Counted from the stretch's first letter, positions 30,901 through 50,800 are shown. The stretch is 64,000 bases of DNA from Auanema rhodensis (GCA_964057225.1 OZ059900.1:9052001-9116000), one strand, 5' to 3'. Made by a program: numbers and translations. The notes: a model not told the origin generated them from the letters alone.

Positions 30901-33900
30901 CAATCGATATCATCTCTTCCCTATACATGTTGTTTTGATAATCAATATGGAATTGTCTATAGTTTTGACTGTTACTTGTGATTCTATATAGATCTCTCTT
31001 TCTGTTTAATCATTTTCAGTATTGAATTGAATTGTTTCGAAAATTTTTATTTCTCTTGAAATTTCAATCGATATCATCTCTTCCCTATACATGTTGTTTT
31101 GATAATCAATATGGAATTGTCTATAGTTTTGACTGTTACTTGTGATTCTATATAGATCTCTCTTTCTGTTTAATCATTTTCAGTATTGAATTGAATTGTT
31201 TCGAAAATTTTTATTTCTCTTGAAATTTCAATCGATATCATCTCTTCCCTATACATGTTGTTTTGATAATCAATATGGAATTGTCTATAGTTTTGACTGT
31301 TACTTGTGATTCTATATAGATCTCTCTTTCTGTTTAATCATTTTCAGTATTGAATTGAATTGTTTCGAAAATTTTTATTTCTCTTGAAATTTCAATCGAT
31401 ATCATCTCTTCCCTATACATGTTGTTTTGATAATCAATATGGAATTGTCTATAGTTTCGACTGTTACTTGTGATTCTATATAGATCTCTCTTTCTGTTTA
31501 ATCATTTTCAGTATTGAATTGAATTGTTTCGAAAATTTTTATTTCTCTTGAAATTTCAATCGATATCATCTCTTCCCTATACATGTTGTTTTGATAATCA
31601 ATATGGAATTGTCTATAGTTTCGACTGTTACTTGTGATTCTATATAGATCTCTCTTTCTGTTTAATCATTTTCAGTATTGAATTGAATTGTTTCGAAAAT
31701 TTTTATTTCTCTTGAAATTTCAATCGATATCATCTCTTCCCTATACATGTTGTTTTGATAATCAATATGGAATTGTCTATAGTTTTGACTGTTACTTGTG
31801 ATTCTATATAGATCTCTCTTTCTGTTTAATCATTTTCAGTATTGAATTGAATTGTTTCGAAAATTTTTATTTCTCTTGAAATTTCAATCGATATCATCTC
31901 TTCCCTATACATGTTGTTTTGATAATCAATATGGAATTGTCTATAGTTTCGACTGTTACTTGTGATTCTATATAGATCTCTCTTTCTGTTTAATCATTTT
32001 CAGTATTGAATTGAATTGTTTCGAAAATTTTTATTTCTCTTGAAATTTCAATCGATATCATCTCTTCCCTATACATGTTGTTTTGATAATCAATATGGAA
32101 TTGTCTATAGTTTCGACTGTTACTTGTGATTCTATATAGATCTCTCTTTCTGTTTAATCATTTTCAGTATTGAATTGAATTGTTTCGAAAATTTTTATTT
32201 CTCTTGAAATTTCAATCGATATCATCTCTTCCCTATACATGTTGTTTTGATAATCAATATGGAATTGTCTATAGTTTCGACTGTTACTTGTGATTCTATA
32301 TAGATCTCTCTTTCTGTTTAATCATTTTCAGTATTGAATTGAATTGTTTCGAAAATTTTTATTTCTCTTGAAATTTCAATCGATATCATCTCTTCCCTAT
32401 ACATGTTGTTTTGATAATCAATATGGAATTGTCTATAGTTTCGACTGTTACTTGTGATTCTATATAGATCTCTCTTTCTGTTTAATCATTTTCAGTATTG
32501 AATTGAATTGTTTCGAAAATTTTTATTTCTCTTGAAATTTCAATCGATATCATCTCTTCCCTATACATGTTGTTTTGATAATCATTATGGAATTGTCTAT
32601 AGTTTTGACTGTTACTTGTGATTCTATATAGATCTCTCTTTCTGTTTAATCATTTTCAGTATTGAATTGAATTGTTTCGAAAATTTTTATTTCTCTTGAA
32701 ATTTCAATCGATATCATCTCTTCCCTATACATGTTGTTTTGAAAATCAATATGGAATTGTCTATAGTTTTGACTGTTACTTGTGATTCTATATAGATCTC
32801 TCTTTCTGTTTAATCATTTTCAGTATTGAATTGAATTGTTTCGAAAATTTTTATTTCTCTTGAAATTTCAATCGATATCATCTCTTCCCTATACATGTTG
32901 TTTTGATAATCAATATGGAATTGTCTATAGTTTCGACTGTTACTTGTGATTCTATATAGATCTCTCTTTCTGTTTAATCATTTTCAGTATTGAATTAAAT
33001 TGTTTCGAAAATTTTTATTTCTCTTGAAATTTCAATCGATATCATCTCTTCCCTATACATGTTGTTTTGATAATCAATATGGAATTGTCTATAGTTTTGA
33101 CTGTTACTTGTGATTCTATATAGATCTCTCTTTCTGTTTAATCATTTTCAGTATTGAATTAAATTGTTTCGAAAATTTTTATTTCTCTTGAAATTTCAAT
33201 CGATATCATCTCTTCCCTATACATGTTGTTTTGATAATCAATATGGAATTGTCTATAGTTTCGACTGTTACTTGTGATTCTATATAGATCTCTCTTTCTG
33301 TTTAATCATTTTCAGTATTGATTTGAATTGTTTCGAAAATTTTTATTTCTCTTGAAATTTCAATCGATATCATCTCTTACCTATACATGTTGTTTTGAAA
33401 ATCAATATGGAATTATCTATAGTTTTGACTGTTACTTGTGATTCTATACAGATCTCTCTTTCTGTTTAATCATTTTCAGTATTGAATTGAATTGTTTCGA
33501 AAATTTTTATTTCTCTTGAAATTTCAATCGATATCATCTCTTCCCTATACATGTTGTTTTGATAATCAATATGGAATTGTCTATAGTTTCGACTGTTACT
33601 TGTGATTCTATATAGATCTCTCTTTCTGTTTAATCATTTTCAGTATTGAATTAAATTGTTTCGAAAATTTTTATTTCTCTTGAAATTTCAATCGATATCA
33701 TCTCTTCCCTATACATGTTGTTTTGATAATCAATATGGAATTGTCTATAGTTTCGACTGTTACTTGTGATTCTATATAGATCTCTCTTTCTGTTTAATCA
33801 TTTTCAGTATTGAATTGAATTGTTTCGAAAATTTTTATTTCTCTTGAAATTTCAATCGATATCATCTCTTACCTATACATGTTGTTTTGAAAATCAATAT

Positions 33901-36900
33901 GGAATTATCTATAGTTTTGACTGTTACTTGTGATTCTATATAGATCTCTCTTTCTGTTTAATCATTTTCAGTATTGAATTGAATTGTTTCGAAAATTTTT
34001 ATTTCTCTTGAAATTTCAATCGATATCATCTCTTACCTATACATGTTGTTTTGAAAATCAATATGGAATTATCTATAGTTTTGACTGTTACTTGTGATTC
34101 TATATAGATCTCTCTTTCTGTTTAATCATTTTCAGTATTGAATTGAATTGTTTCGAAAATTTTTATTTCTCTTGAAATTTCAATCGATATCATCTCTTAC
34201 CTATACATGTTGTTTTGAAAATCAATATGGAATTATCTATAGTTTTGACTGTTACTTGTGATTCTATATAGATCTCTCTTTCTGTTTAATCATTTTCAGT
34301 ATTGAATTGAATTGTTTCGAAAATTTTTATTTCTCTTGAAATTTCAATCGATATCATCTCTTACCTATACATGTTGTTTTGAAAATCAATATGGAATTAT
34401 CTATAGTTTTTACTTTTACTTGTGATTCTATATAGATCTCTCTTTCTGTTTAATCATTTTCAGTATTGAATTGAATTGTTTCGAAAATTTTTATTTCTCT
34501 TGAAATTTCAATCGATATCATCTCTTACCTATACATGTTGTTTTGAAAATCAATATGGAATTATCTATAGTTTTTACTTTTACTTGTGATTCTATATAGA
34601 TCTCTCTTTCTGTTTAATCATTTTCAGTATTGAATTGAATTGTTTCGAAAATTTTTATTTCTCTTGAAATTTCAATCGATATCATCTCTTACCTATACAT
34701 GTTGTTTTGAAAATCAATATGGAATTATCTATAGTTTTGACTGTTACTTGTGATTCTATATAGATCTCTCTTTCTGTTTAATCATTTTCAGTATTGAATT
34801 GAATTGTTTCGAAAATTTTTATTTCTCTTGAAATTTCAATCGATATCATCTCTTACCTATACATGTTGTTTTGAAAATCAATATGGAATTATCTATAGTT
34901 TTGACTGTTACTTGTGATTCTATATAGATCTCTCTTTCTGTTTAATCATTTTCAGTATTGAATTGAATTGTTTCGAAAATTTTTATTTCTCTTGAAATTT
35001 CAATCGATATCATCTCTTACCTATACATGTTGTTTTGAAAATCAATATGGAATTATCTATAGTTTTGACTGTTACTTGTGATTCTATACAGATCTCTCTT
35101 TCTGTTTAATCATTTTCAGTATTGAATTGAATTGTTTCGAAAATTTTTATTTCTCTTGAAATTTCAATCGATATCATCTCTTACCTATACATGTTGTTTT
35201 GAAAATCAATATGGAATTATCTATAGTTTTGACTGTTACTTGTGATTCTATATAGATCTCTCTTTCTGTTTAATCATTTTCAGTATTGAATTGAATTGTT
35301 TCGAAAATTTTTATTTCTCTTGAAATTTCAATCGATATCATCTCTTACCTATACATGTTGTTTTGAAAATCAATATGGAATTATCTATAGTTTTGACTGT
35401 TACTTGTGATTCTATACAGATCTCTCTTTCTGTTTAATCATTTTCAGTATTGAATTGAATTGTTTCGAAAATTTTTATTTCTCTTGAAATTTCAATCGAT
35501 ATCATCTCTTACCTATACATGTTGTTTTGAAAATCAATATGGAATTATCTATAGTTTTGACTGTTACTTGTGATTCTATATAGATCTCTCTTTCTGTTTA
35601 ATCATTTTCAGTATTGAATTGAATTGTTTCGAAAATTTTTATTTCTCTTGAAATTTCAATCGATATCATCTCTTACCTATACATGTTGTTTTGAAAATCA
35701 ATATGGAATTATCTATAGTTTTGACTGTTACTTGTGATTCTATACAGATCTCTCTTTCTGTTTAATCATTTTCAGTATTGAATTGAATTGTTTCGAAAAT
35801 TTTTATTTCTCTTGAAATTTCAATCGATATCATCTCTTACCTATACATGTTGTTTTGAAAATCAATATGGAATTATCTATAGTTTTGACTATTACTTGTG
35901 ATTCTATACAGATCTCTCTTTCTGTTTAATCATTTTCAGTATTGAATTGAATTGTTTCGAAAATTTTTATTTCTCTTGAAATTTCAATCGATATCATCTC
36001 TTACCTATACATGTTGTTTTGAAAATCAATATGGAATTATCTATAGTTTTGACTGTTACTTGTGATTCTATACAGATCTCTCTTTCTGTTTAATCATTTT
36101 CAGTATTGAATTGAATTGTTTCGAAAATTTTTATTTCTCTTGAAATTTCAATCGATATCATCTCTTACCTATACATGTTGTTTTGAAAATCAATATGGAA
36201 TTATCTATAGTTTTGACTGTTACTTGTGATTCTATATAGATCTCTCTTTCTGTTTAATCATTTTCAGTATTGAATTGAATTGTTTCGAAAATTTTTATTT
36301 CTCTTGAAATTTCAATCGATATCATCTCTTACCTATACATGTTGTTTTGAAAATCAATATGGAATTATCTATAGTTTTGACTGTTACTTGTGATTCTATA
36401 TAGATCTCTCTTTCTGTTTAATCATTTTCAGTATTGAATTGAATTGTTTCGAAAATTTTTATTTCTCTTGAAATTTCAATCGATATCATCTCTTACCTAT
36501 ACATGTTGTTTTGAAAATTTTTATTTCTCTTGAAATTTCAATCGATATCATCTCTTACCTATACATGTTGTTTTGAAAATCAATATGGAATTATCTATAG
36601 TTTTGACTGTTACTTGTGATTCTATACAGATCTCTCTTTCTGTTTAATCATTTTCAGTATTGAATTGAATTGTTTCGAAAATTTTTATTTCTCTTGAAAT
36701 TTCAATCGATATCATCTCTTACCTATACATGTTGTTTTGAAAATCAATATGGAATTATCTATAGTTTTGACTATTACTTGTGATTCTATACAGATCTCTC
36801 TTTCTGTTTAATCATTTTCAGTATTGAATTGAATTGTTTCGAAAATTTTTATTTCTCTTGAAATTTCAATCGATATCATCTCTTACCTATACATGTTGTT

Positions 36901-38588
36901 TTGAAAATCAATATGGAATTATCTATAGTTTTGACTATTACTTGTGATTCTATACAGATCTCTCTTTCTGTTTAATCATTTTCAGTATTGAATTGAATTG
37001 TTTCGAAAATTTTTATTTCTCTTGAAATTTCAATCGATATCATCTCTTACCTATACATGTTGTTTTGAAAATCAATATGGAATTATCTATAGTTTTGACT
37101 GTTACTTGTGATTCTATACAGATCTCTCTTTCTGTTTAATCATTTTCAGTATTGAATTGAATTGTTTCGAAAATTTTTATTTCTCTTGAAATTTCAATCG
37201 ATATCATCTCTTACCTATACATGTTGTTTTGAAAATCAATATGGAATTATCTATAGTTTTGACTGTTACTTGTGATTCTATATAGATCTCTCTTTCTGTT
37301 TAATCATTTTCAGTATTGAATTGAATTGTTTCGAAAATTTTTATTTCTCTTGAAATTTCAATCGATATCATCTCTTACCTATACATGTTGTTTTGAAAAT
37401 CAATATGGAATTATCTATAGTTTTGACTGTTACTTGTGATTCTATATAGATCTCTCTTTCTGTTTAATCATTTTCAGTATTGAATTGAATTGTTTCGAAA
37501 ATTTTTATTTCTCTTGAAATTTCAATCGATATCATCTCTTACCTATACATGTTGTTTTGAAAATCAATATGGAATTATCTATAGTTTTGACTGTTACTTG
37601 TGATTCTATATAGATCTCTCTTTCTGTTTAATCATTTTCAGTATTGAATTGAATTGTTTCGAAAATTTTTATTTCTCTTGAAATTTCAATCGATATCATC
37701 TCTTACCTATACATGTTGTTTTGAAAATCAATATGGAATTATCTATAGTTTTGACTGTTACTTGTGATTCTATATAGATCTCTCTTTCTGTTTAATCATT
37801 TTCAGTATTGAATTGAATTGTTTCGAAAATTTTTATTTCTCTTGAAATTTCAATCGATATCATCTCTTACCTATACATGTTGTTTTGAAAATCAATATGG
37901 AATTATCTATAGTTTTGACTGTTACTTGTGATTCTATATAGATCTCTCTTTCTGTTTAATCATTTTCAGTATTGAATTGAATTGTTTCGAAAATTTTTAT
38001 TTCTCTTGAAATTTCAATCGATATCATCTCTTACCTATACATGTTGTTTTGAAAATCAATATGGAATTATCTATAGTTTTGACTGTTACTTGTGATTCTA
38101 TATAGATCTCTCTTTCTGTTTAATCATTTTCAGTATTGATTTGAATTGTTTCGAAAATTTTTATTTCTCTTGAAATTTCAATCGATATCATCTCTTACCT
38201 ATACATGTTGTTTTGAAAATCAATATGGAATTATCTATAGTTTTGACTGTTACTTGTGATTCTATACAGATCTCTCTTTCTGTTTAATCATTTTCAGTAT
38301 TGATTTGAATTGTTTCGAAAATTTTTATTTCTCTTGAAATTTCAATCGATATCATCTCTTACCTATACATGTTGTTTTGAAAATCAATATGGAATTATCT
38401 ATAGTTTTGACTGTTACTTGTGATTCTATACAGATCTCTCTTTCTGTTTAATCATTTTCAGTATTGAATTGAATTGTTTCGAAAATTTTTATTTCTCTTG
38501 AAATTTCAATCGATATCATCTCTTCCCTATACATGTTGTTTTGATAATCAATATGGAATTGTCTATAGTTTTAACTGTTACTTGTGAT
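901..38588 (+). repeat. 164-bp tandem satellite, left array (~230 monomers)
   Basis: Representative monomer: gaattgaattgtttcgaaaatttttatttctcttgaaatttcaatcgatatcatctcttccctatacatgttgttttgaaaatcaatatggaattgtctatagttttgactgttacttgtgattctatatagatctctctttctgtttaatcattttcagtatt. The tcg of ttcgaa is in exact 164 phase: 942 to 8978 (49 units), 9061 to 36449 (167 units), 36675 to 38479 (11 units). There is one 83-bp unit and one 226-bp unit. Confidence 0.99.
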
Positions 38589-39110
38589 CGATTGAAATTT
38601 CGAGAAAAATAAAAATTTTCGAAACAATTCATTTCAATACTGAAGATGATTAAACAGAAAGAGAGATCTATAGAGAATCACAAGTAACAGTCGGAACTAT
38701 AAACATTTCCATATTGATTATCAAAACAACATGTATAGGGAAGAGATGATATCGATTGAAATTTCAAGAGAAATAAAAATTTTCGAAACAATTCAATTCA
38801 ATACTGAAAATGATTAAACAGAAAGAGAGATCTATAGAGAATTACAAGTAACAGTCAAAACTATAGACAATTCCATATTGATTATCAAAACAACATGTAT
38901 AGGTAAAAGATGATATCGATTGAAATTTCAAGAGAAATAAAAATTTTCGAAACAATTCAATTCAATACTGAAAATGATTAAACAGAAAGAGAGATCTATA
39001 GAGAATTACAAGTAACAGTCAAAACTATAGATAATTCCATATTGATTTTCAAAACAACATCTATAGGGAAGAGATGATATCGATTGAAATTTCAACAAAA
39101 ATTAAAATTT
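38587..39110 (-). repeat. Inverted block of the same 164-bp satellite (~3.2 monomers)
   Basis: Reverse-complement monomers (gatatcgattgaaatttcaagagaaataaaaattttcgaaacaattcaattcaatactg...). The orientation switches at gtgAT|cgattg with a 2-bp AT overlap. Confidence 0.98.
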
Positions 39111-39314
39111 GATTTGATTTGATAAATTTGAAAGAAAAGTATGTGTTGTCTTTACTTTTATTTAATTTTTTATTGTTTCAATCTCATTCTTTTCATGAGC
39201 GCCATTAAAATTAACAAAGATATCGTTTTAAAAGAAGACAATGTTCATCTAAAATAATCTTGTTGTCTGTCCTCGATTGTGACAACAGAAGACTTACACT
39301 TTCCATCTAGATTT

Positions 39315-39344
39315 GGGTCGGCCGGGTCGCGAGCGAATAAATAG
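39315..39344 (+). promoter_or_regulatory. Candidate core promoter of gene A: GC-rich GGGTCG-gcc-GGGTCG followed by TATA-like ATAAATAG
   Basis: The most GC/CpG-rich non-coding patch in the cassette, ~180-205 bp upstream of the ATG. A polypyrimidine acceptor (ttttatttttttag, AG at 39433-39434) lies between it and the ATG and may be a 5'UTR intron or trans-splice acceptor. Confidence 0.35.
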
Positions 39345-39521
39345 CTCGATCGAATGCCACCTTCTCTCTTTTTTTCCTTCCTGTATTTCGATTTGGTGGC
39401 TGTTTCCTAGTAACCACACCTTTTATTTTTTTAGATTGGAATTAAGATCGATCATAATAAAAATTGTTCATATTCCTAGCGAAGAAGCATTTAAATACGC
39501 TAAAATTGTCCCGGCGAATAT

Positions 39522-40290
39522 ATGAAGAAAATACTCGCCATTTATCTCTACCTTGTGAACCATTTACATGCAGGTATTATAGTTAGATTATATAGTTTCA
39601 TAAATGAAAAGGTCATGTTTTGGCTGAAATTTGTTTTTTTCAGGCAGCACCAACGATGCTACTTACTTCTCTACATCAACGGCTTCTTCGCTAGACAGCT
39701 CTATTTCGTCTGTAGAAGCGACCGCTCCATCTTCAGCCTTCGACATGAACGAACAGTTGGCAAAGATAGCTAACATCTGCCTGACCCGTTCCGAGCACGA
39801 GCAGCTGACGGGTGGCCTTCTTCGATACAGGATAGCGCGACCGTTTAATTTTGTTTTGATAAACGAAGCGCAAGCTGTCATTGGTCTTGAAGAGCTACGT
39901 GCTGTGTTAGGCTTTGCCCCACCCGGAAATTGGACATACTATAAGGAACCCACGAGAGAGGAAATCGCAGCCGCCCTCAATATCGAGGAGTACTACGAGC
40001 TGATGGAACCGCGCAGTACCTGGCGTAGCCTCAATAGCACGTATTTCTTTGAAAAAAACTTCCCTCCCGCCATAGCGTTCTTAGACATTCGAATCCCAGA
40101 AATTCGTACCATTTATCGACATAAATTTGAAGAAATCCATCGTCGTCATGATCCAAAAGGGATAACAGACAAGAAAGAGGTTGATAGCATGATTGACAGT
40201 TTTAAACCCACATGGGAAAGAATCAGCAAAGCAATTGATAATATCTATTATGTAAATCATGGATGCCTGAATAACAACGGATTGCCTTAA
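39522..40290 (+). CDS. Gene A: two-exon gene, join(39522..39573,39644..40290), 232-aa putative secreted protein of unrecognised family
   Basis: Exon 1 encodes MKKILAIYLYLVNHLHA plus G, ending CAG|GTATTA. Exon 2 follows TTTTTTTCAG|. The phase-1 junction G|GC (Gly) joins in frame to STNDATYF...NGLP*. The N-terminus is signal-peptide-like, exon 2 is visibly more GC-rich than the flanks, AATAAA lies downstream, and the frame is preserved in the diverged twin copy. Confidence 0.85.
39574..39643 (+). other. 70-nt GT-AG intron of gene A
   Basis: gtattat...gtttttttcag; AT-rich; removing it fuses ORF 39522.. with ORF 39631..40290 in frame. Confidence 0.82.
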
Positions 40291-40356
40291 CATTGATAAT
40301 ATATTGTTATATGCATAATACATTGTATATTGTTTACTAGTGTATTGTAAATCGGA

Positions 40357-40362
40357 AATAAA
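40357..40362 (+). terminator. AATAAA polyadenylation signal of gene A
   Basis: Canonical hexamer 66 bp after the TAA stop, followed by T-rich sequence. Confidence 0.6.
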
Positions 40363-40410
40363 TGCTTTTAACGAATTTTTATTTCTACACGCATTAATGT
40401 CAAAACTGAA

Positions 40411-40478
40411 TATAGAGAATCACACGAAACAGTCAAAACTATAAACAATTCCATATTGATTTTCAAAGCAACATGTAT
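40411..40478 (-). repeat. Degenerate 68-bp fragment of the 164-bp satellite inside the palindrome spacer
   Basis: tatagagaatcacacgaaacagtcaaaactataaacaattccatattgattttcaaagcaacatgtat matches the reverse complement of monomer positions ~64-131 with about 4 mismatches. Confidence 0.93.
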
Positions 40479-40585
40479 CTCTTGCAAGTAATTAGCTCAC
40501 AAGGAATGACTTGCCCCATATGTTACTTTGACTCAATTTCAGTTTTGACATTAATGCGTGTAGAAATAAAAATTCGTTAAAAGCA

Positions 40586-40591
40586 TTTATT
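40586..40591 (-). terminator. AATAAA polyadenylation signal of gene B
   Basis: TTTATT on the + strand, the exact mirror of 40357-40362. Confidence 0.6.
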
Positions 40592-40651
40592 TCCGATTTA
40601 CAATACACTAGTAAACAATATACAATGTATTATGCATATAACAATATCTTA

Positions 40652-41426
40652 TCAATAGTAAGGCAATCCCTTCTTTTTCGGGCAATCATAATGTTGAAGA
40701 AAGATATTATCAGTTGCTTCCTCGATACTGTCATAAGTGGTTTCAAAACGGTCAATCATGCGATCAACATGTTTTCTGTCTGTTTTCCCTTTTGGATCAT
40801 GACGACGATGGATTTCTTCAAATTTATGTCGATAAATGGTACGAATTTCTGGGATTCGAATGTCCAAGAACGCTATGGCGGGAGGGAAGTTTTTTTCAAA
40901 GAAATACGTGCTATTAAGGCTACGCTTGATATTGCGTGGTTCCATCAGCTCGTAGTACTCCTCGATATTGAGGGCGGCTGCGATTTCCTCTCTCGTGGGT
41001 TTCTTATAGTATGTCCAATTTCCGGGTGGGGCAAAGCCTAACACAGCACGTAGCTCTTCAAGACCAATGACAGCTTGCGCTTCGTTCATCAAACCATTAT
41101 TAAACATTCGCGCCATCCCGTATCGAAAAATGCTACCCGCCAGCTGCTCGTGTTCGGGAATGGTCAGGCAGATGTTAGCTATCTTTGCCAACTGTTCGTC
41201 CATGTCGAAGGCTGAAGATGGAGCGGTCGCTTCTACAGACGAAATAGAGCTGTCTAGCGAAGAAGCCGTTGATGTAGAGAAGTAAGTAGCATCGTTGGTG
41301 CTGCCTGAAAAAAACAAATTTCAGCCAAAACATGACCTTTTCATTTATGAAACTATATAATCTAACTATAATACCTGCATGTAAATGGTTCACAAGGTAC
41401 AGATAAATGGCGAGTATTTTCTTCAT
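40652..41426 (-). CDS. Gene B: two-exon paralog of gene A, complement(join(40652..41304,41375..41426)), 234-aa putative secreted protein
   Basis: Mirror of gene A with the same exon-1 peptide and an identical intron. It differs by 40 amino acids plus a 2-residue extension (TAA to TAC, ending GLPYY*). No frameshift or premature stop. Confidence 0.85.
41305..41374 (-). other. 70-nt GT-AG intron of gene B
   Basis: Exact reverse complement of 39574-39643. Confidence 0.82.
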
Positions 41427-41603
41427 ATATTCGCCGGGACAATTTTAGCGTATTTAAATGCTTCTTCGCTAGGAATATGAACAATTTTTATTATGATCGA
41501 TCTTAATTCCAATCTAAAAAAATAAAAGGTGTGGTTACTAGGAAACAGCCACCAAATCGAAATACAGGAAGGAAAAAAAGAGAGAAGGTGGCATTCGATC
41601 GAG

Positions 41604-41633
41604 CTATTTATTCGCTCGCGACCCGGCCGACCC
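41604..41633 (-). promoter_or_regulatory. Candidate core promoter of gene B (mirror of 39315-39344)
   Basis: ctatttattcgctcgcgacccggccgaccc, an identical reverse complement. Confidence 0.35.
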
Positions 41634-41837
41634 AAATCTAGATGGAAAGTGTAAGTCTTCTGTTGTCACAATCGAGGACAGACAACAAGATTATTTTAGA
41701 TGAACATTGTCTTCTTTTAAAACGATATCTTTGTTAATTTTAATGGCGCTCATGAAAAGAATGAGATTGAAACAATAAAAAATTAAATAAAAGTAAAGAC
41801 AACACATACTTTTCTTTCAAATTTATCAAATCAAATC

Positions 41838-44800
41838 AAATTTTAATTTTTGTTGAAATTTCAATCGATATCATCTCTTCCCTATAGATGTTGTTTTGAA
41901 AATCAATATGGAATTATCTATAGTTTTGACTGTTACTTGTAATTCTCTATAGATCTCTCTTTCTGTTTAATCATTTTCAGTATTGAATTGAATTGTTTCG
42001 AAAATTTTTATTTCTCTTGAAATTTCAATCGATATCATCTTTTACCTATACATGTTGTTTTGATAATCAATATGGAATTGTCTATAGTTTTGACTGTTAC
42101 TTGTAATTCTCTATAGATCTCTCTTTCTGTTTAATCATTTTCAGTATTGAATTGAATTGTTTCGAAAATTTTAATTTTTGTTGAAATTTCAATCGATATC
42201 ATCTCTTCCCTATAGATGTTGTTTTGAAAATCAATATGGAATTATCTATAGTTTTGACTGTTACTTGTAATTCTCTATAGATCTCTCTTTCTGTTTAATC
42301 ATTTTCAGTATTGAATTGAATTGTTTCGAAAATTTTAATTTTTGTTGAAATTTCAATCGATATCATCTCTTCCCTATAGATGTTGTTTTGAAAATCAATA
42401 TGGAATTATCTATAGTTTTGACTGTTACTTGTAATTCTCTATAGATCTCTCTTTCTGTTTAATCATTTTCAGTATTGAATTGAATTGTTTCGAAAATTTT
42501 AATTTTTGTTGAAATTTCAATCGATATCATCTCTTCCCTATAGATGTTGTTTTGAAAATCAATATGGAATTATCTATAGTTTTGACTGTTACTTGTAATT
42601 CTCTATAGATCTCTCTTTCTGTTTAATCATTTTCAGTATTGAATTGAATTGTTTCGAAAATTTTAATTTTTGTTGAAATTTCAATCGATATCATCTCTTC
42701 CCTATAGATGTTGTTTTGAAAATCAATATGGAATTATCTATAGTTTTGACTGTTACTTGTGATTCTATATAGATATTTCCTTCTCTTTAATCATCTTCAT
42801 TATTGAATTGAATTGTTTCGAAAATTTTAATTTTTGTTGGAATTTCAATCGATATCATCTTTTCCCTATACATGTTGTTTTGAAAATCAATATGGAATTA
42901 TCTATAGTTTTGACTGTTACTTGTGATTCTATATAGATATTTCCTTCTCTTTAATCATCTTCATTATTGAATTGAATTGTTTCGAAAATTTTAATTTTTG
43001 TTGGAATTTCAATCGATATCATCTTTTCCCTATACATGTTGTTTTGAAAATCAATATGGAATTATCTATAGTTTTGACTGTTACTTGTGATTCTATATAG
43101 ATATTTCCTTCTCTTTAATCATCTTCATTATTGAATTGAATTGTTTCGAAAATTTTAATTTTTGTTGGAATTTCAATCGATATCATCTTTTCCCTATACA
43201 TGTTGTTTTGAAAATCAATATGGAATTATCTATAGTTTTGACTGTTACTTGTGATTCTATATAGATATTTCCTTCTCTTTAATCATCTTCATTATTGAAT
43301 TGAATTGTTTCGAAAATTTTAATTTTTGTTGAAATTTCAATCGATATCATCTTTTCCCTATAGATGTTGTTTTGAAAATCAATATGGAATTATCTCTAGT
43401 TTTCACTGTTACTTGTGATTCTCTATAGATATTTCCTTCTCTCTGATCATCTTCAGTATTTAATTGTATTGTTTCGAAAATTTTTATTTTTGTTGGAATT
43501 TCAATCGATATCATCTTTTCCCTATAGATGTTGTTTTGAAAATCAATATGGAATTATCAATAGTTTTGACTGTTACTTGTGATTCTATATAGATATTTCC
43601 TTCTCTCTGATCATCTTCAGTATTTAATTGAATTGTTTCGAAAATTTTTATTTTTGTTGGAATTTCAATCGATATCATCTTTTCCCTATAGATGTTGTTT
43701 TGAAAATCAATATGGAATTATCTCTAGTTTTCACTGTTACTTGTGATTCTCTATAGATATTTCCTTCTCTCTGATCATCTTCAGTATTTAATTGTATTGT
43801 TTCGAAAATTTTTATTTTTGTTGGAATTTCAATCGATATCATCTTTTCCCTATACATGTTGTTTTGAAAATCAATATGGAATTATCAATAGTTTTGACTG
43901 TTACTTGTGATTCTATATAGATATTTCCTTCTCTTTAATCATCTTCATTATTGAATTGAATTGTTTCGAAAATTTTAATTTTTGTTGGAATTTCAATCGA
44001 TATCATCTTTTCCCTATACATGTTGTTTTGAAAATCAATATGGAATTATCTATAGTTTTGACTGTTACTTGTGATTCTATATAGATATTTCCTTCTCTTT
44101 AATCATCTTCATTATTGAATTGAATTGTTTCGAAAATTTTAATTTTTGTTGGAATTTCGATCGATATCATCTTTTCCCTATACATGTTGTTTTGAAAATC
44201 AATATGGAATTATCTATAGTTTTGACTGTTACTTGTGATTCTATATAGATATTTCCTTCTCTTTAATCATCTTCATTATTGAATTGAATTGTTTCGAAAA
44301 TTTTAATTTTTGTTGGAATTTCAATCGATATCATCTTTTCCCTATACATGTTGTTTTGAAAATCAATATGGAATTATCAATAGTTTTGACTGTTACTTGT
44401 GATTCTATATAGATATTTCCTTCTCTTTAATCATCTTCATTATTGAATTGAATTGTTTCGAAAATTTTAATTTTTGTTGGAATTTCGATCGATATCATCT
44501 TTTCCCTATACATGTTGTTTTGAAAATCAATATGGAATTATCTATAGTTTTGACTGTTACTTGTGATTCTATATAGATATTTCCTTCTCTTTAATCATCT
44601 TCATTATTGAATTGAATTGTTTCGAAAATTTTAATTTTTGTTGGAATTTCAATCGATATCATCTTTTCCCTATACATGTTGTTTTGAAAATCAATATGGA
44701 ATTATCAATAGTTTTGACTGTTACTTGTGATTCTATATAGATATTTCCTTCTCTTTAATCATCTTCATTATTGAATTGAATTGTTTCGAAAATTTTAATT

Positions 44801-47800
44801 TTTGTTGGAATTTCGATCGATATCATCTTTTCCCTATACATGTTGTTTTGAAAATCAATATGGAATTATCTATAGTTTTGACTGTTACTTGTGATTCTAT
44901 ATAGATATTTCCTTCTCTTTAATCATCTTCATTATTGAATTGAATTGTTTCGAAAATTTTAATTTTTGTTGGAATTTCAATCGATATCATCTTTTCCCTA
45001 TACATGTTGTTTTGAAAATCAATATGGAATTATCTATAGTTTTGACTGTTACTTGTGATTCTATATAGATATTTCCTTCTCTTTAATCATCTTCATTATT
45101 GAATTGAATTGTTTCGAAAATTTTAATTTTTGTTGGAATTTCGATCGATATCATCTTTTCCCTATACATGTTGTTTTGAAAATCAATATGGAATTATCTA
45201 TAGTTTTGACTGTTACTTGTGATTCTATATAGATATTTCCTTCTCTTTAATCATCTTCATTATTGAATTGAATTGTTTCGAAAATTTTAATTTTTGTTGG
45301 AATTTCAATCGATATCATCTTTTCCCTATACATGTTGTTTTGAAAATCAATATGGAATTATCTATAGTTTTGACTGTTACTTGTGATTCTATATAGATAT
45401 TTCCTTCTCTTTAATCATCTTCATTATTGAATTGAATTGTTTCGAAAATTTTAATTTTTGTTGGAATTTCAATCGATATCATCTTTTCCCTATACATGTT
45501 GTTTTGAAAATCAATATGGAATTATCTATAGTTTTGACTGTTACTTGTGATTCTATATAGATATTTCCTTCTCTTTAATCATCTTCATTATTGAATTGAA
45601 TTGTTTCGAAAATTTTAATTTTTGTTGGAATTTCAATCGATATCATCTTTTCCCTATACATGTTGTTTTGAAAATCAATATGGAATTATCTATAGTTTTG
45701 ACTGTTACTTGTGATTCTATATAGATATTTCCTTCTCTTTAATCATCTTCATTATTGAATTGAATTGTTTCGAAAATTTTAATTTTTGTTGAAATTTCAA
45801 TCGATATCATCTTTTCCCTATACATGTTGTTTTGAAAATCAATATGGAATTATCTATAGTTTTGACTGTTACTTGTGATTCTATATAGATATTTCCTTCT
45901 CTTTAATCATCTTCATTATTGAATTGAATTGTTTCGAAAATTTTAATTTTTGTTGGAATTTCAATCGATATCATCTTTTCCCTATACATGTTGTTTTGAA
46001 AATCAATATGGAATTATCTATAGTTTTGACTGTTACTTGTGATTCTATATAGATATTTCCTTCTCTTTAATCATCTTCATTATTGAATTGAATTGTTTCG
46101 AAAATTTTAATTTTTGTTGGAATTTCAATCGATATCATCTTTTCCCTATACATGTTGTTTTGAAAATCAATATGGAATTGTCTATAGTTTCGACTGTTAC
46201 TTGTGATTCTATATAGATCTCTCTTTCTGTTTAATCATTTTCAGTATTGAATTAAATTGTTTCGAAAATTTTTATTTCTCTTGAAATTTCAATCGATATC
46301 ATCTCTTCCCTATACATGTTGTTTTGATAATCAATATGGAATTATCTATAGTTTTGACTGTTACTTGTGATTCTATATAGATATTTCCTTCTCTTTAATC
46401 ATCTTCATTATTGAATTGAATTGTTTCGAAAATTTTAATTTTTGTTGGAATTTCAATCGATATCATCTTTTCCCTATACATGTTGTTTTGAAAATCAATA
46501 TGGAATTATCTATAGTTTTGACTGTTACTTGTGATTCTATATAGATATTTCCTTCTCTTTAATCATCTTCATTATTGAATTGAATTGTTTCGAAAATTTT
46601 AATTTTTGTTGGAATTTCAATCGATATCATCTTTTCCCTATACATGTTGTTTTGAAAATCAATATGGAATTATCTATAGTTTTGACTGTTACTTGTGATT
46701 CTATATAGATATTTCCTTCTCTTTAATCATCTTCATTATTGAATTGAATTGTTTCGAAAATTTTAATTTTTGTTGAAATTTCAATCGATATCATCTTTTC
46801 CCTATACATGTTGTTTTGAAAATCAATATGGAATTATCTATAGTTTTGACTGTTACTTGTGATTCTATATAGATATTTCCTTCTCTTTAATCATCTTCAT
46901 TATTGAATTGAATTGTTTCGAAAATTTTAATTTTTGTTGGAATTTCAATCGATATCATCTTTTCCCTATACATGTTGTTTTGAAAATCAATATGGAATTA
47001 TCTATAGTTTTGACTGTTACTTGTGATTCTATATAGATATTTCCTTCTCTTTAATCATCTTCATTATTGAATTGAATTGTTTCGAAAATTTTAATTTTTG
47101 TTGGAATTTCAATCGATATCATCTTTTCCCTATACATGTTGTTTTGAAAATCAATATGGAATTATCTATAGTTTTGACTGTTACTTGTGATTCTATATAG
47201 ATATTTCCTTCTCTTTAATCATCTTCATTATTGAATTGAATTGTTTCGAAAATTTTAATTTTTGTTGGAATTTCAATCGATATCATCTTTTCCCTATACA
47301 TGTTGTTTTGAAAATCAATATGGAATTATCTATAGTTTTGACTGTTACTTGTGATTCTATATAGATATTTCCTTCTCTTTAATCATCTTCATTATTGAAT
47401 TGAATTGTTTCGAAAATTTTAATTTTTGTTGAAATTTCAATCGATATCATCTTTTCCCTATACATGTTGTTTTGAAAATCAATATGGAATTATCTATAGT
47501 TTTGACTGTTACTTGTGATTCTATATAGATATTTCCTTCTCTTTAATCATCTTCATTATTGAATTGAATTGTTTCGAAAATTTTAATTTTTGTTGGAATT
47601 TCAATCGATATCATCTTTTCCCTATACATGTTGTTTTGAAAATCAATATGGAATTGTCTATAGTTTCGACTGTTACTTGTGATTCTATATAGATCTCTCT
47701 TTCTGTTTAATCATTTTCAGTATTGAATTAAATTGTTTCGAAAATTTTTATTTCTCTTGAAATTTCAATCGATATCATCTCTTCCCTATACATGTTGTTT

Positions 47801-50800
47801 TGATAATCAATATGGAATTATCTATAGTTTTGACTGTTACTTGTGATTCTATATAGATATTTCCTTCTCTTTAATCATCTTCATTATTGAATTGAATTGT
47901 TTCGAAAATTTTAATTTTTGTTGAAATTTCAATCGATATCATCTTTTCCCTATACATGTTGTTTTGAAAATCAATATGGAATTATCTATAGTTTTGACTG
48001 TTACTTGTGATTCTATATAGATATTTCCTTCTCTTTAATCATCTTCATTATTGAATTGAATTGTTTCGAAAATTTTAATTTTTGTTGGAATTTCAATCGA
48101 TATCATCTTTTCCCTATACATGTTGTTTTGAAAATCAATATGGAATTGTCTATAGTTTCGACTGTTACTTGTGATTCTATATAGATCTCTCTTTCTGTTT
48201 AATCATTTTCAGTATTGAATTAAATTGTTTCGAAAATTTTTATTTCTCTTGAAATTTCAATCGATATCATCTCTTCCCTATACATGTTGTTTTGATAATC
48301 AATATGGAATTATCTATAGTTTTGACTGTTACTTGTGATTCTATATAGATATTTCCTTCTCTTTAATCATCTTCATTATTGAATTGAATTGTTTCGAAAA
48401 TTTTAATTTTTGTTGGAATTTCAATCGATATCATCTTTTCCCTATACATGTTGTTTTGAAAATCAATATGGAATTGTCTATAGTTTCGACTGTTACTTGT
48501 GATTCTATATAGATCTCTCTTTCTGTTTAATCATTTTCAGTATTGAATTAAATTGTTTCGAAAATTTTTATTTCTCTTGAAATTTCAATCGATATCATCT
48601 CTTCCCTATACATGTTGTTTTGATAATCAATATGGAATTATCTATAGTTTTGACTGTTACTTGTGATTCTATATAGATATTTCCTTCTCTTTAATCATCT
48701 TCATTATTGAATTGAATTGTTTCGAAAATTTTAATTTTTGTTGGAATTTCAATCGATATCATCTTTTCCCTATACATGTTGTTTTGAAAATCAATATGGA
48801 ATTGTCTATAGTTTCGACTGTTACTTGTGATTCTATATAGATCTCTCTTTCTGTTTAATCATTTTCAGTATTGAATTAAATTGTTTCGAAAATTTTTATT
48901 TCTCTTGAAATTTCAATCGATATCATCTCTTCCCTATACATGTTGTTTTGATAATCAATATGGAATTATCTATAGTTTTGACTGTTACTTGTGATTCTAT
49001 ATAGATATTTCCTTCTCTTTAATCATCTTCATTATTGAATTGAATTGTTTCGAAAATTTTAATTTTTGTTGGAATTTCAATCGATATCATCTTTTCCCTA
49101 TACATGTTGTTTTGAAAATCAATATGGAATTGTCTATAGTTTCGACTGTTACTTGTGATTCTATATAGATCTCTCTTTCTGTTTAATCATTTTCAGTATT
49201 GAATTAAATTGTTTCGAAAATTTTTATTTCTCTTGAAATTTCAATCGATATCATCTCTTCCCTATACATGTTGTTTTGATAATCAATATGGAATTATCTA
49301 TAGTTTTGACTGTTACTTGTGATTCTATATAGATATTTCCTTCTCTTTAATCATCTTCATTATTGAATTGAATTGTTTCGAAAATTTTAATTTTTGTTGG
49401 AATTTCAATCGATATCATCTTTTCCCTATACATGTTGTTTTGAAAATCAATATGGAATTGTCTATAGTTTCGACTGTTACTTGTGATTCTATATAGATCT
49501 CTCTTTCTGTTTAATCATTTTCAGTATTGAATTAAATTGTTTCGAAAATTTTTATTTCTCTTGAAATTTCAATCGATATCATCTCTTCCCTATACATGTT
49601 GTTTTGATAATCAATATGGAATTATCTATAGTTTTGACTGTTACTTGTGATTCTATATAGATATTTCCTTCTCTTTAATCATCTTCATTATTGAATTGAA
49701 TTGTTTCGAAAATTTTAATTTTTGTTGGAATTTCAATCGATATCATCTTTTCCCTATACATGTTGTTTTGAAAATCAATATGGAATTGTCTATAGTTTCG
49801 ACTGTTACTTGTGATTCTATATAGATCTCTCTTTCTGTTTAATCATTTTCAGTATTGAATTAAATTGTTTCGAAAATTTTTATTTCTCTTGAAATTTCAA
49901 TCGATATCATCTCTTCCCTATACATGTTGTTTTGATAATCAATATGGAATTATCTATAGTTTTGACTGTTACTTGTGATTCTATATAGATATTTCCTTCT
50001 CTTTAATCATCTTCATTATTGAATTGAATTGTTTCGAAAATTTTAATTTTTGTTGGAATTTCAATCGATATCATCTTTTCCCTATACATGTTGTTTTGAA
50101 AATCAATATGGAATTGTCTATAGTTTCGACTGTTACTTGTGATTCTATATAGATCTCTCTTTCTGTTTAATCATTTTCAGTATTGAATTAAATTGTTTCG
50201 AAAATTTTTATTTCTCTTGAAATTTCAATCGATATCATCTCTTCCCTATACATGTTGTTTTGATAATCAATATGGAATTATCTATAGTTTTGACTGTTAC
50301 TTGTGATTCTATATAGATATTTCCTTCTCTTTAATCATCTTCATTATTGAATTGAATTGTTTCGAAAATTTTAATTTTTGTTGGAATTTCAATCGATATC
50401 ATCTTTTCCCTATACATGTTGTTTTGAAAATCAATATGGAATTGTCTATAGTTTCGACTGTTACTTGTGATTCTATATAGATCTCTCTTTCTGTTTAATC
50501 ATTTTCAGTATTGAATTAAATTGTTTCGAAAATTTTTATTTCTCTTGAAATTTCAATCGATATCATCTCTTCCCTATACATGTTGTTTTGATAATCAATA
50601 TGGAATTATCTATAGTTTTGACTGTTACTTGTGATTCTATATAGATATTTCCTTCTCTTTAATCATCTTCATTATTGAATTGAATTGTTTCGAAAATTTT
50701 AATTTTTGTTGGAATTTCAATCGATATCATCTTTTCCCTATACATGTTGTTTTGAAAATCAATATGGAATTGTCTATAGTTTCGACTGTTACTTGTGATT

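What the first reader, a model, noticed from the sequence alone, without database searches (positions are those of the whole stretch)
38587..42361. Satellite-embedded palindromic gene pair encoding two divergent versions of a secreted protein: candidate undescribed diversification system
Seen: the only genes in ~60 kb of satellite are two intact convergent paralogs, one on each arm of an indel-free palindrome. The upstream DNA (746 bp, including two satellite monomers), the intron and the distal 3' flank are identical, but the mature proteins are strongly diverged. Known analogues: repeat-flanked variant-antigen genes (trypanosome VSG with 70-bp repeats), segmental conversion of Borrelia vlsE, arm-to-arm gene conversion in primate Y palindromes, and Drosophila Dox-family genes flanked by 359-bp satellite. 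Inference: the satellite and palindrome form a recombination-prone compartment that keeps regulatory DNA homogeneous while a host-, pathogen- or self/non-self-facing protein surface diversifies. I do not recognise the protein family or this arrangement.
Basis: partly seen in the sequence, partly recalled or inferred. Interest (0 to 1): 0.92.

Follow-up and report, generated by a model that had tools for sequence, protein, structure and literature searches.

The report
Palindromic pair of mobile secreted-protein genes
Two mirror-image copies of a small secreted-protein gene sit in a repeat array on the X chromosome of the worm Auanema rhodense: their surrounding DNA is identical while the proteins' outer surfaces have diverged fast, and the gene lineage has moved between worm genera next to a virus-like (Maverick/Polinton) protease gene.

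Summary
An indel-free palindrome (1824-nt arms, 127-nt spacer) carries two intact convergent one-intron genes (232 and 234 aa). There are no differences in 952 nt of promoter, intron, 3' flank and inner satellite. Exon 2 has 57 differences in three patches. Both versions occur at equal depth in three DNA studies.

No other family locus has the satellite, there are no donor cassettes, the mutation spectrum is unbiased, and other notes of this scan report many inverted duplications in this genome.

The genome is Auanema rhodense and the contig is the X chromosome. The 164-bp satellite is one small local array.

Best reading: a fold-back inverted duplication whose arms are homogenised by gene conversion, while exposed residues of a secreted all-alpha protein diverge under diversifying selection. 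Buried heptad positions and all invariant family residues are kept.

New here: the gene unit is 80-95% identical in DNA, non-coding parts included, to copies in Caenorhabditis remanei (dS about 0.2). That is incompatible with vertical descent. At five loci it lies directly downstream of an adenain-type Maverick/Polinton protease gene, so it is probably horizontally transferred cargo. The protein's function is unknown.

Other notes of this scan cover this same stretch; none covers other DNA with this gene.

The parts
904..38586 (+). Left part of the 164-bp satellite array, + orientation, in several sub-variant domains
   Evidence: Tandem Repeats Finder: period 164, 97-99% matches
38587..39110 (-). 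3.2 satellite monomers in inverted orientation, forming the outer part of the left arm. 38587-38775 is 8% unlike its partner; 38776-39110 is identical to 41838-42172.
   Evidence: Satellite inside the identical arms shows that the duplication copied host DNA after the gene was embedded.
39111..39521 (+). Upstream module of copy L (promoter and 5' UTR). It is homologous to the DNA just downstream of the Maverick protease stop codon at other family loci.
   Evidence: blastn 39135-39476 against C. remanei L011 (71%), L018 and L019. An RNA-like contig reaches 39433.
39522..39573 (+). Copy L exon 1 (signal-peptide-like N-terminus)
   Evidence: spliced contig in run X11
39574..39643 (+). Copy L intron (70 nt, GT..AG), identical in both arms
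   Evidence: The joint 39641/41378 in an RNA-like contig equals removal of this intron. C. remanei has an intron at the same position.
39644..40290 (+). Copy L exon 2 with stop codon; product 232 aa
39787..39861 (+). Variable patch 1 (codons 66-90; mirror 41087-41161)
   Evidence: 17 nt differences; pN 0.26 against pS 0.06
40011..40032 (+). Variable patch 2 (codons 142-144 and neighbours; mirror 40916-40937)
40163..40300 (+). Variable patch 3 (codons 191-229 plus the stop region; mirror 40648-40785), covering the C-terminal helices
   Evidence: pN 0.30 against pS 0.13. Positions kept follow a 3/4 spacing.
40291..40410 (+). Copy L 3' flank. One difference from the mirror at 40300 (40291 also differs, in R's extension codons); identical from 40301 to 40410.
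   Evidence: homologous to the C. remanei 3' flank
40411..40469 (-). Spacer part 1: fragment of a satellite monomer in inverted orientation (junction filler)
   Evidence: 64 nt (40411-40474), 91% identical to the reverse complement of a monomer
40470..40537 (-). Spacer part 2: native 3' flank of copy R, collinear with the C. remanei and chromosome-5 copies. This marks R as the parental copy and L as the fold-back copy.
   Evidence: blastn 40470-40537 against L011 10994-10926 (90%) and L017 (95%)
40652..41304 (-). Copy R exon 2 with stop codon; product 234 aa
   Evidence: the R version of patch 1 is present in RNA-like contigs
41305..41374 (-). Copy R intron
   Evidence: mirror of the L intron, identical
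41375..41426 (-). Copy R exon 1
41427..41837 (-). Upstream module of copy R
   Evidence: identical mirror of 39111-39521
41838..64000 (+). Right part of the 164-bp satellite array, + orientation. Its first 524 nt form the outer right arm.

Best explanation
What it is. A fold-back inverted duplication on the X chromosome of Auanema rhodense, inside a small single-locus 164-bp satellite. The duplicated unit is a roughly 1.4-kb gene module: promoter, a one-intron gene for a probably secreted, disulfide-bonded, all-alpha protein of about 215 mature residues, and a 3' flank. The module is the remnant of a Maverick/Polinton-associated cargo region. At other loci the same module starts directly after an adenain-type protease gene. 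The lineage is shared with Caenorhabditis at a DNA identity that only horizontal transfer explains.

How it works. Copy R is parental and copy L was made by fold-back copying. The loop kept 68 nt of R's flank plus a satellite scrap. This is shown by sequence geometry; the mechanism is inferred.

Short-tract gene conversion between the arms has since erased all differences in non-coding DNA (inferred from 0 differences in 952 nt against 5% at synonymous sites). Conversions that overwrite three surface patches are lost through selection. Once the patches were 25-30% diverged, heteroduplex rejection would also block them.

In those patches both copies changed, often at the same sites, with amino-acid changes about three times as frequent per site as silent ones. 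The buried a/d positions of the C-terminal helices, both conserved cysteines and all invariant family residues are kept. The locus therefore yields two folded proteins with different outer faces driven by the same promoter.

Expression and function. L is transcribed and spliced (shown). R is transcribed at least through patch 1 (shown). The ligand or function is unknown. My guess is an extracellular binding protein in a conflict, either with a pathogen or tied to the virus-like element.
For: Structure and reality.

Species and chromosome. The assembly size of 180.9 Mb equals that of the A. rhodense APS4 preprint. Its AT-1 probe matches 115,040 times at a 176-bp period. The X-retained probe XR-1 maps to this contig from 7.21 Mb.

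Mosaic. There are 0 differences in 952 nt of flank against 8 of 152 synonymous sites (p = 1e-7). Patches have pN 0.30 against pS 0.09 (Fisher p = 0.014, patches chosen post hoc). The rest of the CDS has 2 non-synonymous differences in 382 sites and 4 synonymous in 112. Difference sites fall in the family's most variable columns (Mann-Whitney p = 2.5e-10). All ten invariant or near-invariant residues are kept.

Divergence in place. Both copies are derived: about 11 sites L-derived, 10 R-derived and 18 where neither matches the outgroups. L and R are sisters, support 100/98.

Fold. AF2 pLDDT 89, pTM 0.81, all helices.

Horizontal transfer. dS to C. remanei GCK72_017164 is 0.20-0.24 and nt identity 83-84%, with an intron at the same position. 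Non-coding identity between Auanema loci and C. remanei is 71-95% over hundreds of bases. A neighbouring conserved enzyme exon is only 42% identical in protein. The tree mixes Auanema and Caenorhabditis on short branches.

Maverick link. The ORF upstream of family genes matches Pfam Peptidase_C5 (28.9 and 26.0 bits in intact relatives, cut-off 21.3). By tblastn it lies upstream of the family gene in L018, L019, L017, JU1783 L024 and, as its last 44 codons, in C. remanei L011. An intact relative is followed by an ORF resembling HNH-type Polinton pPolB. PRO is a core Polinton gene (PMC10748475). Maverick cargo transfer among nematode genera is published for two other families (10.1101/2022.07.12.499685).
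Against: - Gene conversion is inferred, not observed. The apparent strain differences at 41400, 41002, 40865 and 40083, each equal to the other arm's state, may be artefacts of collapsed, bubble-popped contigs.
- The dN/dS excess is significant only for patches chosen after seeing the data. For the whole CDS, p = 0.14.
- No complete Maverick (TIRs, pPolB, integrase) surrounds any family copy I could read. 12 of 14 related protease copies have no family gene within 1.5 kb, so the vector is circumstantial.
- The R-specific 3' half is absent from the RNA-like contigs.
- The signal peptide is judged by eye only.
- No spanning long read was examined.
Confidence: 0.6

Rival explanations
1. One reading: the satellite plus palindrome is a dedicated, recombination-prone diversification compartment, an undescribed system comparable to VSG or vlsE loci.
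For: The gene pair is the only coding DNA in 63 kb of satellite. The divergence is patch-restricted with an excess of amino-acid changes. Palindromes recur at family loci.
Against: No other family locus has the satellite. The satellite exists only here. There are no donor cassettes, and no paralogue matches either patch version. The spectrum is symmetric and there is no reverse transcriptase in the window. Both copies have full promoters. Other notes of this scan report many inverted gene duplications in this genome (unverified).
Confidence: 0.06
2. The inverted duplication is very recent, which is why the flanks are identical. The patches were then imported by ectopic conversion or recombination from diverged family variants that are not in this assembly: other alleles, or variants carried by co-infecting Mavericks.
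For: Maverick cargo is reported to be modular through recombination (10.1101/2022.07.12.499685). C. brenneri and C. remanei members share an identical 18-aa signal peptide on mature parts that are about 57% identical. The upstream module is shuffled relative to coding parts.
Against: L and R share derived residues inside the patches and are sisters. Neither patch version matches any sequence among 144 representative relatives or the own genome. Derived states are split evenly between the two copies.
Confidence: 0.13
3. Assembly or polishing artefact: two alleles or haplotypes of one gene were joined as a palindrome, or sparse differences were erased by polishing.
For: The arms are perfect in low-difference regions. 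I could not lay long reads. The Logan contigs are short.
Against: The assembly is PacBio HiFi of an inbred line. In three independent DNA studies both versions occur at about 1:1 and shared parts at up to about twice that depth. The same 3' flank is joined to two different spacer sides, in contigs 40301-40457 and 40416-40647. The outer satellite part of the arms keeps 16 differences.
Confidence: 0.04
4. One copy is simply decaying under relaxed constraint after duplication, with no positive selection.
For: Whole-gene dN/dS of about 1.9 is not significantly above 1. The R 3' half is not seen in RNA-like contigs.
Against: There are no indels, frameshifts or premature stops in either copy. All invariant residues, both cysteines and the buried heptad positions are kept. 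Outside the patches dN/dS is about 0.15. Changes are split between both copies. Neutral decay would also hit the flanks.
Confidence: 0.06
5. The palindrome is what is left of the two terminal inverted repeats of a Maverick that carried the gene in its TIRs and later lost its interior.
For: The protease appears to lie near element ends in this genome (note s1-383979). Palindromes occur at three family loci in two genera.
Against: The identical arms include 335 nt of host satellite on both sides and lack the protease and any terminus. In C. remanei the arm boundary (9718) lies inside the shared unit, which starts at 9453.
Confidence: 0.03

Closest known systems
Maverick/Polinton cargo genes exchanged between nematode genera (WASP proteases and KRMA kinases; Widen et al., bioRxiv 10.1101/2022.07.12.499685)
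   Same: An intron-bearing non-viral gene next to a Maverick core gene. Patchy, species-incongruent tree. High nucleotide identity across genera. Modular shuffling of N-terminal or upstream parts.
   Different: A different protein family: probably secreted, all-alpha, with no ubiquitin-like head, protease or kinase fold. It lies downstream of PRO, not between the TIR and the integrase. No complete element was found around any copy, so the vector is inferred.
Arm-to-arm gene conversion in sex-chromosome palindromes (primate Y and X ampliconic palindromes; from my own knowledge)
   Same: Inverted arms with a short spacer, identical in non-coding DNA, carrying gene pairs on a sex chromosome.
   Different: The arms are 1.8 kb rather than tens of kb to Mb. 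The coding regions are not homogenised: three patches are 25-30% diverged. Conversion is not directly shown here.
Concerted evolution with selection-maintained islands of divergence between duplicates (models of Innan and Teshima; the RHD/RHCE type of case; from my own knowledge)
   Same: Duplicates homogenised except where selection favours difference, giving sharp mosaic boundaries.
   Different: The contrast here is extreme (0% against about 30%), on a very small scale, in an inverted pair within satellite DNA.
Fold-back inverted duplications in A. rhodense satellite arrays
   Same: The satellite flips strand at a sharp junction, with mirror-image arms and a short loop.
   Different: This one carries a functional gene pair. 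Those described are pure satellite and much larger.
Segmental-conversion antigenic variation (trypanosome VSG, Borrelia vlsE) and diversity-generating retroelements
   Same: Patch-restricted variation of an exposed protein surface with constant flanks.
   Different: No silent cassette archive, no single expression site, no reverse transcriptase, and no adenine-biased spectrum.

Membership tests
Maverick/Polinton-borne cargo gene (horizontally transferred) | Lies next to Maverick core genes | tested here: met
   An adenain-type PRO ORF lies directly upstream at L018, L019, L017, JU1783 L024 and, as its last 44 codons, C. remanei L011.
Maverick/Polinton-borne cargo gene (horizontally transferred) | Lies inside a complete element bounded by TIRs, with pPolB and integrase | tested here: inconclusive
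   No pPolB, integrase or TIR was found in the 10-kb loci around family copies. The genome has at least 112 pPolB matches elsewhere.
Maverick/Polinton-borne cargo gene (horizontally transferred) | Gene tree incongruent with the species tree, and divergence far below the genome background | tested here: met
   dS 0.20-0.24 and non-coding identity 71-95% between Auanema loci and C. remanei. Mixed clades on short branches. A neighbouring enzyme exon is 42% identical in protein.
Maverick/Polinton-borne cargo gene (horizontally transferred) | Host-like gene structure (introns) | tested here: met
   One intron at the same position in A. rhodense and C. remanei, spliced in RNA-like contigs.
Palindrome with arm-to-arm gene conversion | Arms near-identical in non-coding DNA despite older coding divergence | tested here: met
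   0 differences in 952 nt against 8 of 152 synonymous sites, p = 1e-7.
Palindrome with arm-to-arm gene conversion | Direct trace of exchange: variants shared between arms across individuals or species | tested here: inconclusive
   Four contig variants equal the other arm's state, but double-depth collapsed contigs can produce this artefactually.
Cassette-based antigenic variation (VSG or vlsE type) | Archive of silent donor segments matching the variable patches | tested here: not met
   The own genome has 3 intact copies plus pseudogenes, and none matches either patch version.
Diversity-generating retroelement | Adenine-specific substitutions and a nearby reverse transcriptase | tested here: not met
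   Differences where L has A: 19; where R has A: 20. Transitions equal transversions. No long ORF other than the genes.
SXP/RAL-2 (Ani s 5-like) or WSN-domain proteins (labels that UniRef gives some relatives) | Match to the Pfam domain model | tested here: not met
   No such Pfam hit in L, R or any of 57 aligned relatives. No match by profile search of PDB sequences. Fold searches give a best Z of 5.2.
Germline-restricted (somatically eliminated) gene of A. rhodense | Lies between programmed break sites, in a low-coverage eliminated block | not testable with these tools
   The locus is on the X between retained-type XR-1 repeats (from 7.21 Mb) and gene-bearing DNA. The preprint says the central eliminated X region lacks large repeat blocks. 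Retention is therefore more likely, but break-site coordinates and coverage were not available to me.

The most novel reading that the evidence does not exclude
This is a third, previously unreported class of Maverick/Polinton-associated cargo: a hypervariable secreted all-alpha protein with no detectable fold relative. It spreads between nematode genera (Auanema and Caenorhabditis). After landing it is duplicated as a palindrome whose arms are homogenised while the exposed face is driven apart. On this reading it is a mobile host-interaction or conflict factor, not an ordinary host gene.
Probability: 0.3. Interest if true: 0.75.

Novelty: new member of a known kind. Interest (0 to 1): 0.58.

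Why it matters
It is an unusually clean natural example of two forces acting on one 1.8-kb duplicate. Homogenisation has been complete in non-coding DNA, while divergence is confined to the exposed residues of a folded protein.

It also adds a candidate third protein family to the short list of genes known to cross between nematode genera beside Maverick genes. This family is probably secreted and has a confident predicted fold without known relatives.

Both points can be tested directly with public HiFi and RNA-seq data of A. rhodense and with existing Caenorhabditis genomes.

It does not reveal a new kind of diversification machinery.

Tried and rejected
- **Protein identity.** Pfam on L, R and 57 relatives gave nothing. 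A profile against PDB sequences gave nothing meaningful. Foldseek against PDB, the ESM Atlas shape search and VIA-align wide gave no real match, best Z 5.2. The UniRef labels SXP/RAL-2 and WSN were not reproduced. The Polinton 'puORF' is excluded by size (300 aa or more).
- **Donor search.** No paralogue matches either patch version.
- **Satellite at other family loci.** None found.
- **DGR-like spectrum.** Absent.
- **Rfam.** Only sub-threshold chance hits.
- **Baseline palindrome frequency.** Whether palindromes are enriched at this family remains untested.
- **Strain polymorphism as proof of conversion.** Rejected as unsafe, because the contigs concerned have about double depth and may be collapsed.
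- **Germline-only reading.** Prompted by other notes and the PDE preprint, but judged less likely once the contig proved to be the X with retained-type repeats nearby and the array proved small. Still unproven.
- **TIR-remnant model of the palindrome.** Rejected, because host satellite lies inside the identical arms.
- **Neighbours as co-transferred genes.** The 334-aa ORF next to the C. remanei copy has no match in A. rhodense. One xanthine dehydrogenase exon found no match at E 1e-10 or better; another matched at 42%.
- **Gene identifiers.** A paper search returned nothing.

Full report
**The structure is real**

The window is 94% one 164-bp satellite. At 38587 the satellite flips strand, and an indel-free inverted repeat follows: arms 38587-40410 and 40538-42361, 1824 nt, 127 nt apart.

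The 77 mismatches are very unevenly placed:
- 16 in the outermost 190 nt of satellite
- none from 38776 to 39547
- one silent change in exon 1 (39548)
- none in the 70-nt intron
- 57 in exon 2, plus two in the stop/extension codons (40290, 40291) and one in the 3' flank (40300)
- none from 40301 to 40410

Most lie in three patches: 39787-39861, 40011-40032 and 40163-40300.

Each arm holds an intact gene with one intron. The products are 232 aa (L) and 234 aa (R) and differ at 40 residues. Every ORF of 80 aa or more in the window lies in the palindrome, except one of 84 aa in the non-satellite left edge.

Contigs of three independent DNA studies hold both versions of patches 1 and 3 without a mismatch and at near-equal depth (for example 71 against 68 and 56 against 58 in X1). 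The shared segments are at up to about twice that depth. Separate contigs join the same 3' flank to the two different sides of the spacer (40301-40457 and 40416-40647). An RNA-like run has a contig in which exon 1 is joined to exon 2 with the predicted intron gone. It has the L gene to 40330 at depth 40 and both versions of patch 1, L at 27 and R at 16. No long read was laid.

**Whose genome**

The genome measures 180,911,798 bases, the span reported for the new germline assembly of Auanema rhodense APS4 (bioRxiv 10.64898/2026.08.27.747507). That paper's AT-1 FISH probe matches it exactly 115,040 times at a 176-bp period. The lead came from another note of this scan (s1-393647), and I checked it myself.

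The paper's X-retained probe XR-1 maps to this same contig from 7.21 Mb, so the locus is on the X.

The 164-bp satellite is not one of the multi-megabase blocks. A conserved 22-mer occurs 410 times in the genome, 304 of them in this window, starting at the window's array edge.

The paper states that the small eliminated region in the middle of the X lacks large repeat blocks and that few eliminated genes are expressed. I therefore think the pair is more likely retained in the soma than germline-restricted. I could not test this.

**The mosaic**

By Nei-Gojobori counts the pair has 50.3 amino-acid-changing and 7.7 silent differences, giving dN 0.099 and dS 0.052.

- Silent coding sites (8 of 152) differ far more than non-coding arm DNA (0 of 952, p = 1e-7). 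A recent duplication followed by point mutation cannot explain the pattern.
- In the patches pN is 0.30 against pS 0.09 (p = 0.014, with patches chosen after the fact).
- Outside them there are 2 changing differences in 382 sites and 4 silent in 112, the mark of purifying selection.
- The 40 differing residues fall in the family's most variable columns (p = 2.5e-10). All ten invariant or near-invariant family residues, including both cysteines, are kept in both copies.
- Against the closest outgroups, about 11 sites changed in L, about 10 in R, and at about 18 sites neither copy has the outgroup state.
- L and R also share derived residues inside patch 3 and are sister sequences with 100/98 support. 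The divergence therefore arose in place and on both copies; it was not imported.
- The substitution spectrum is symmetric, with A-to-G 10, G-to-A 10 and transitions equal to transversions. This speaks against a DGR-like or other directed mutator.

**Where the changes sit in the protein**

The AlphaFold model built on 57 relatives is confident (pLDDT 89, pTM 0.81) and all-helical. Patch 3 covers the C-terminal helices, residues 194-220 and 222-228.

The residues kept in both copies are V197, M200, I201, F204, T207, I211, A214 and I218. They follow a 3/4 spacing, as the buried face of a helix does. Nearly every position between them differs, often with a change of charge (read directly). This is my reading of the sequence against the predicted helix, not a computed solvent exposure.

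The fold has no convincing relative in PDB or the ESM Atlas, and no Pfam family matches.

**Horizontal transfer**

The closest database protein is Caenorhabditis remanei GCK72_017164 at 74% identity. Further relatives occur in C. nigoni, C. brenneri, C. angaria, C. auriculariae and Auanema sp. JU1783.

- Codon alignment with the C. remanei gene gives 83-84% nucleotide identity and dS of 0.20-0.24, with an intron at the same position.
- Similarity continues into non-coding DNA. The upstream region 39135-39476 is 71% identical, the 3' flank is included in the 80% match, and 40470-40537 is 90% identical in inverted orientation.
- The C. remanei upstream region is 83% identical over 612 nt to that of a different A. 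rhodense paralogue, and 95% over 129 nt to an Auanema JU1783 locus.
- An exon of the conserved enzyme gene next door in C. remanei finds only a 42% protein match in A. rhodense.
- Silent sites are already saturated between Caenorhabditis species (established knowledge). Vertical descent between two genera therefore cannot give these values.
- In the family tree a clade of 11 sequences on short branches mixes A. rhodense, Auanema JU1783, C. remanei, C. brenneri and C. nigoni. Starred branches force at least three changes of label for each of the A. rhodense, JU1783 and C. remanei groups.

**The Maverick link**

Homology between C. remanei and three Auanema loci begins at exactly the same base (L011 9453). 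In the Auanema loci that base lies inside an ORF that runs up to the family gene.

- Intact relatives of that ORF match Pfam Peptidase_C5, the adenovirus endoprotease, above the curated cut-off (28.9 and 26.0 bits against 21.3). The copy at the paralogue scores 18.1.
- By tblastn the ORF lies directly upstream of the family gene at three A. rhodense loci and in Auanema JU1783. In C. remanei only its last 44 codons remain.
- This protease is a core Maverick/Polinton gene (PMC10748475).
- The genome holds at least 151 such protease matches and at least 112 pPolB matches. Typical elements have the two about 4.7 kb apart.
- An intact relative of our protease lineage is followed by an ORF resembling the HNH-bearing pPolB of nematode and oomycete Polintons. 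This rests on a feature search and is a lead only.
- Only 2 of 14 protease copies of this lineage have a family gene within 1.5 kb. The gene is therefore cargo-like, not a core gene.
- Transfer of Maverick cargo between nematode genera, with modular shuffling, is published for WASP proteases and KRMA kinases (10.1101/2022.07.12.499685).
- I found no complete element around any family copy, so the vector is inferred.

**How the palindrome formed**

Copy R continues collinearly with the C. remanei and chromosome-5 copies for 68 nt beyond the arm (40470-40537). L stops at 40410 and is followed by a 64-nt scrap of inverted satellite.

The identical part of the arms includes 335 nt of host satellite. 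So R, already embedded in satellite, was copied by a fold-back event with a 127-nt loop. This excludes the idea that the arms are leftover Maverick terminal repeats.

Other notes of this scan describe fold-back duplications in this genome's satellites and several palindromic gene pairs. These notes are unverified.

The C. remanei copy also lies in a perfect palindrome of at least 3952 nt. Two other A. rhodense family loci touch palindromes of 2287 nt (100% identical) and 1427 nt (97%). Whether this exceeds the genome's background I could not test.

**Verdict**

The most likely mechanism is arm-to-arm gene conversion that keeps promoter, intron and flanks identical, combined with diversifying selection, and later heteroduplex rejection, that keeps three surface patches apart.

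The satellite appears incidental, and no dedicated diversification system is needed.

The more notable result is that the gene belongs to a lineage moved between nematode genera next to a Maverick protease.

Open points are the direct proof of conversion, the missing R 3' half in RNA-like contigs, the soma-or-germline status of the locus, and the protein's function.

Noticed in passing
L011:9718-20813 (C. remanei CM021148.1, about 4.13-4.15 Mb): The C. remanei relative lies in a perfect inverted repeat of at least 3952 nt that runs to the locus end. The 3192 nt between the arms hold a second palindrome (1059-nt arms, 98%). The arm boundary falls inside the unit shared with Auanema.
   Followed up: partly
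L020:2166-7866 (G000 C3, about 16.904-16.909 Mb): A 2287-nt, 100% identical palindrome with fragments of the same gene family at the inner edges of both arms. The right copy runs 136 nt further into the spacer, so the fold-back junction cuts the gene's C-terminal part.
   Followed up: partly
window 40567-41021 (3' half of copy R): In the RNA-like run X11 the R version of patch 1 is present at depth 16, but no contig covers the R versions of patches 2 and 3. The L-type 3' part has depth 40, about the sum of both patch-1 versions (27 + 16). This could mean a recombinant form, early termination of R transcripts, or a contig artefact. It is unexplained.
   Followed up: no
window 904-64000; G000 C8 from 9,052,963: The 164-bp satellite is a single-locus array. 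It has 410 exact matches of a conserved 22-mer genome-wide, 304 of them here. About 36 reverse-strand copies lie beyond the window end, so a second inverted block probably follows. Sub-variant domains change at about 9033, 36480 and across the palindrome.
   Followed up: partly
P0001 and P0006 (C. remanei, C. brenneri): The two proteins share an identical 18-residue N-terminal signal-like peptide, although their mature parts belong to different subclades. The upstream DNA module is likewise shuffled relative to coding parts. This modularity is like that reported for Maverick cargo.
   Followed up: partly
P0008 / L024:10001-23103 (Auanema sp. JU1783): The 1478-aa database protein is an annotation fusion of a PI3-kinase gene with a downstream member of this family. 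A second member follows at 28557-29225, again preceded by the protease ORF.
   Followed up: partly
G000, many loci (e.g. C5:10,156,686 / 10,161,151; C8:10,802,901 / 10,807,633): A. rhodense carries a large Maverick/Polinton population, with at least 112 pPolB and at least 151 protease matches. In the commonest type the two genes are about 4.7 kb apart and many have open frames.
   Followed up: no
window 38543-38722: The strand-flip junction of the satellite forms a long hairpin. Rfam scores it weakly as plant miRNA precursors (30 bits against a gathering score of 85), which is a chance effect of the inverted repeat.
   Followed up: yes
L011:11108-12014, L017:3887-4327, L024:29398-30168: A second segment downstream of the family gene is also shared between C. 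remanei and both Auanema species at 81-86% identity. It is in opposite orientation in JU1783. Its coding content is unclear, and it is absent from the window's palindrome.
   Followed up: no
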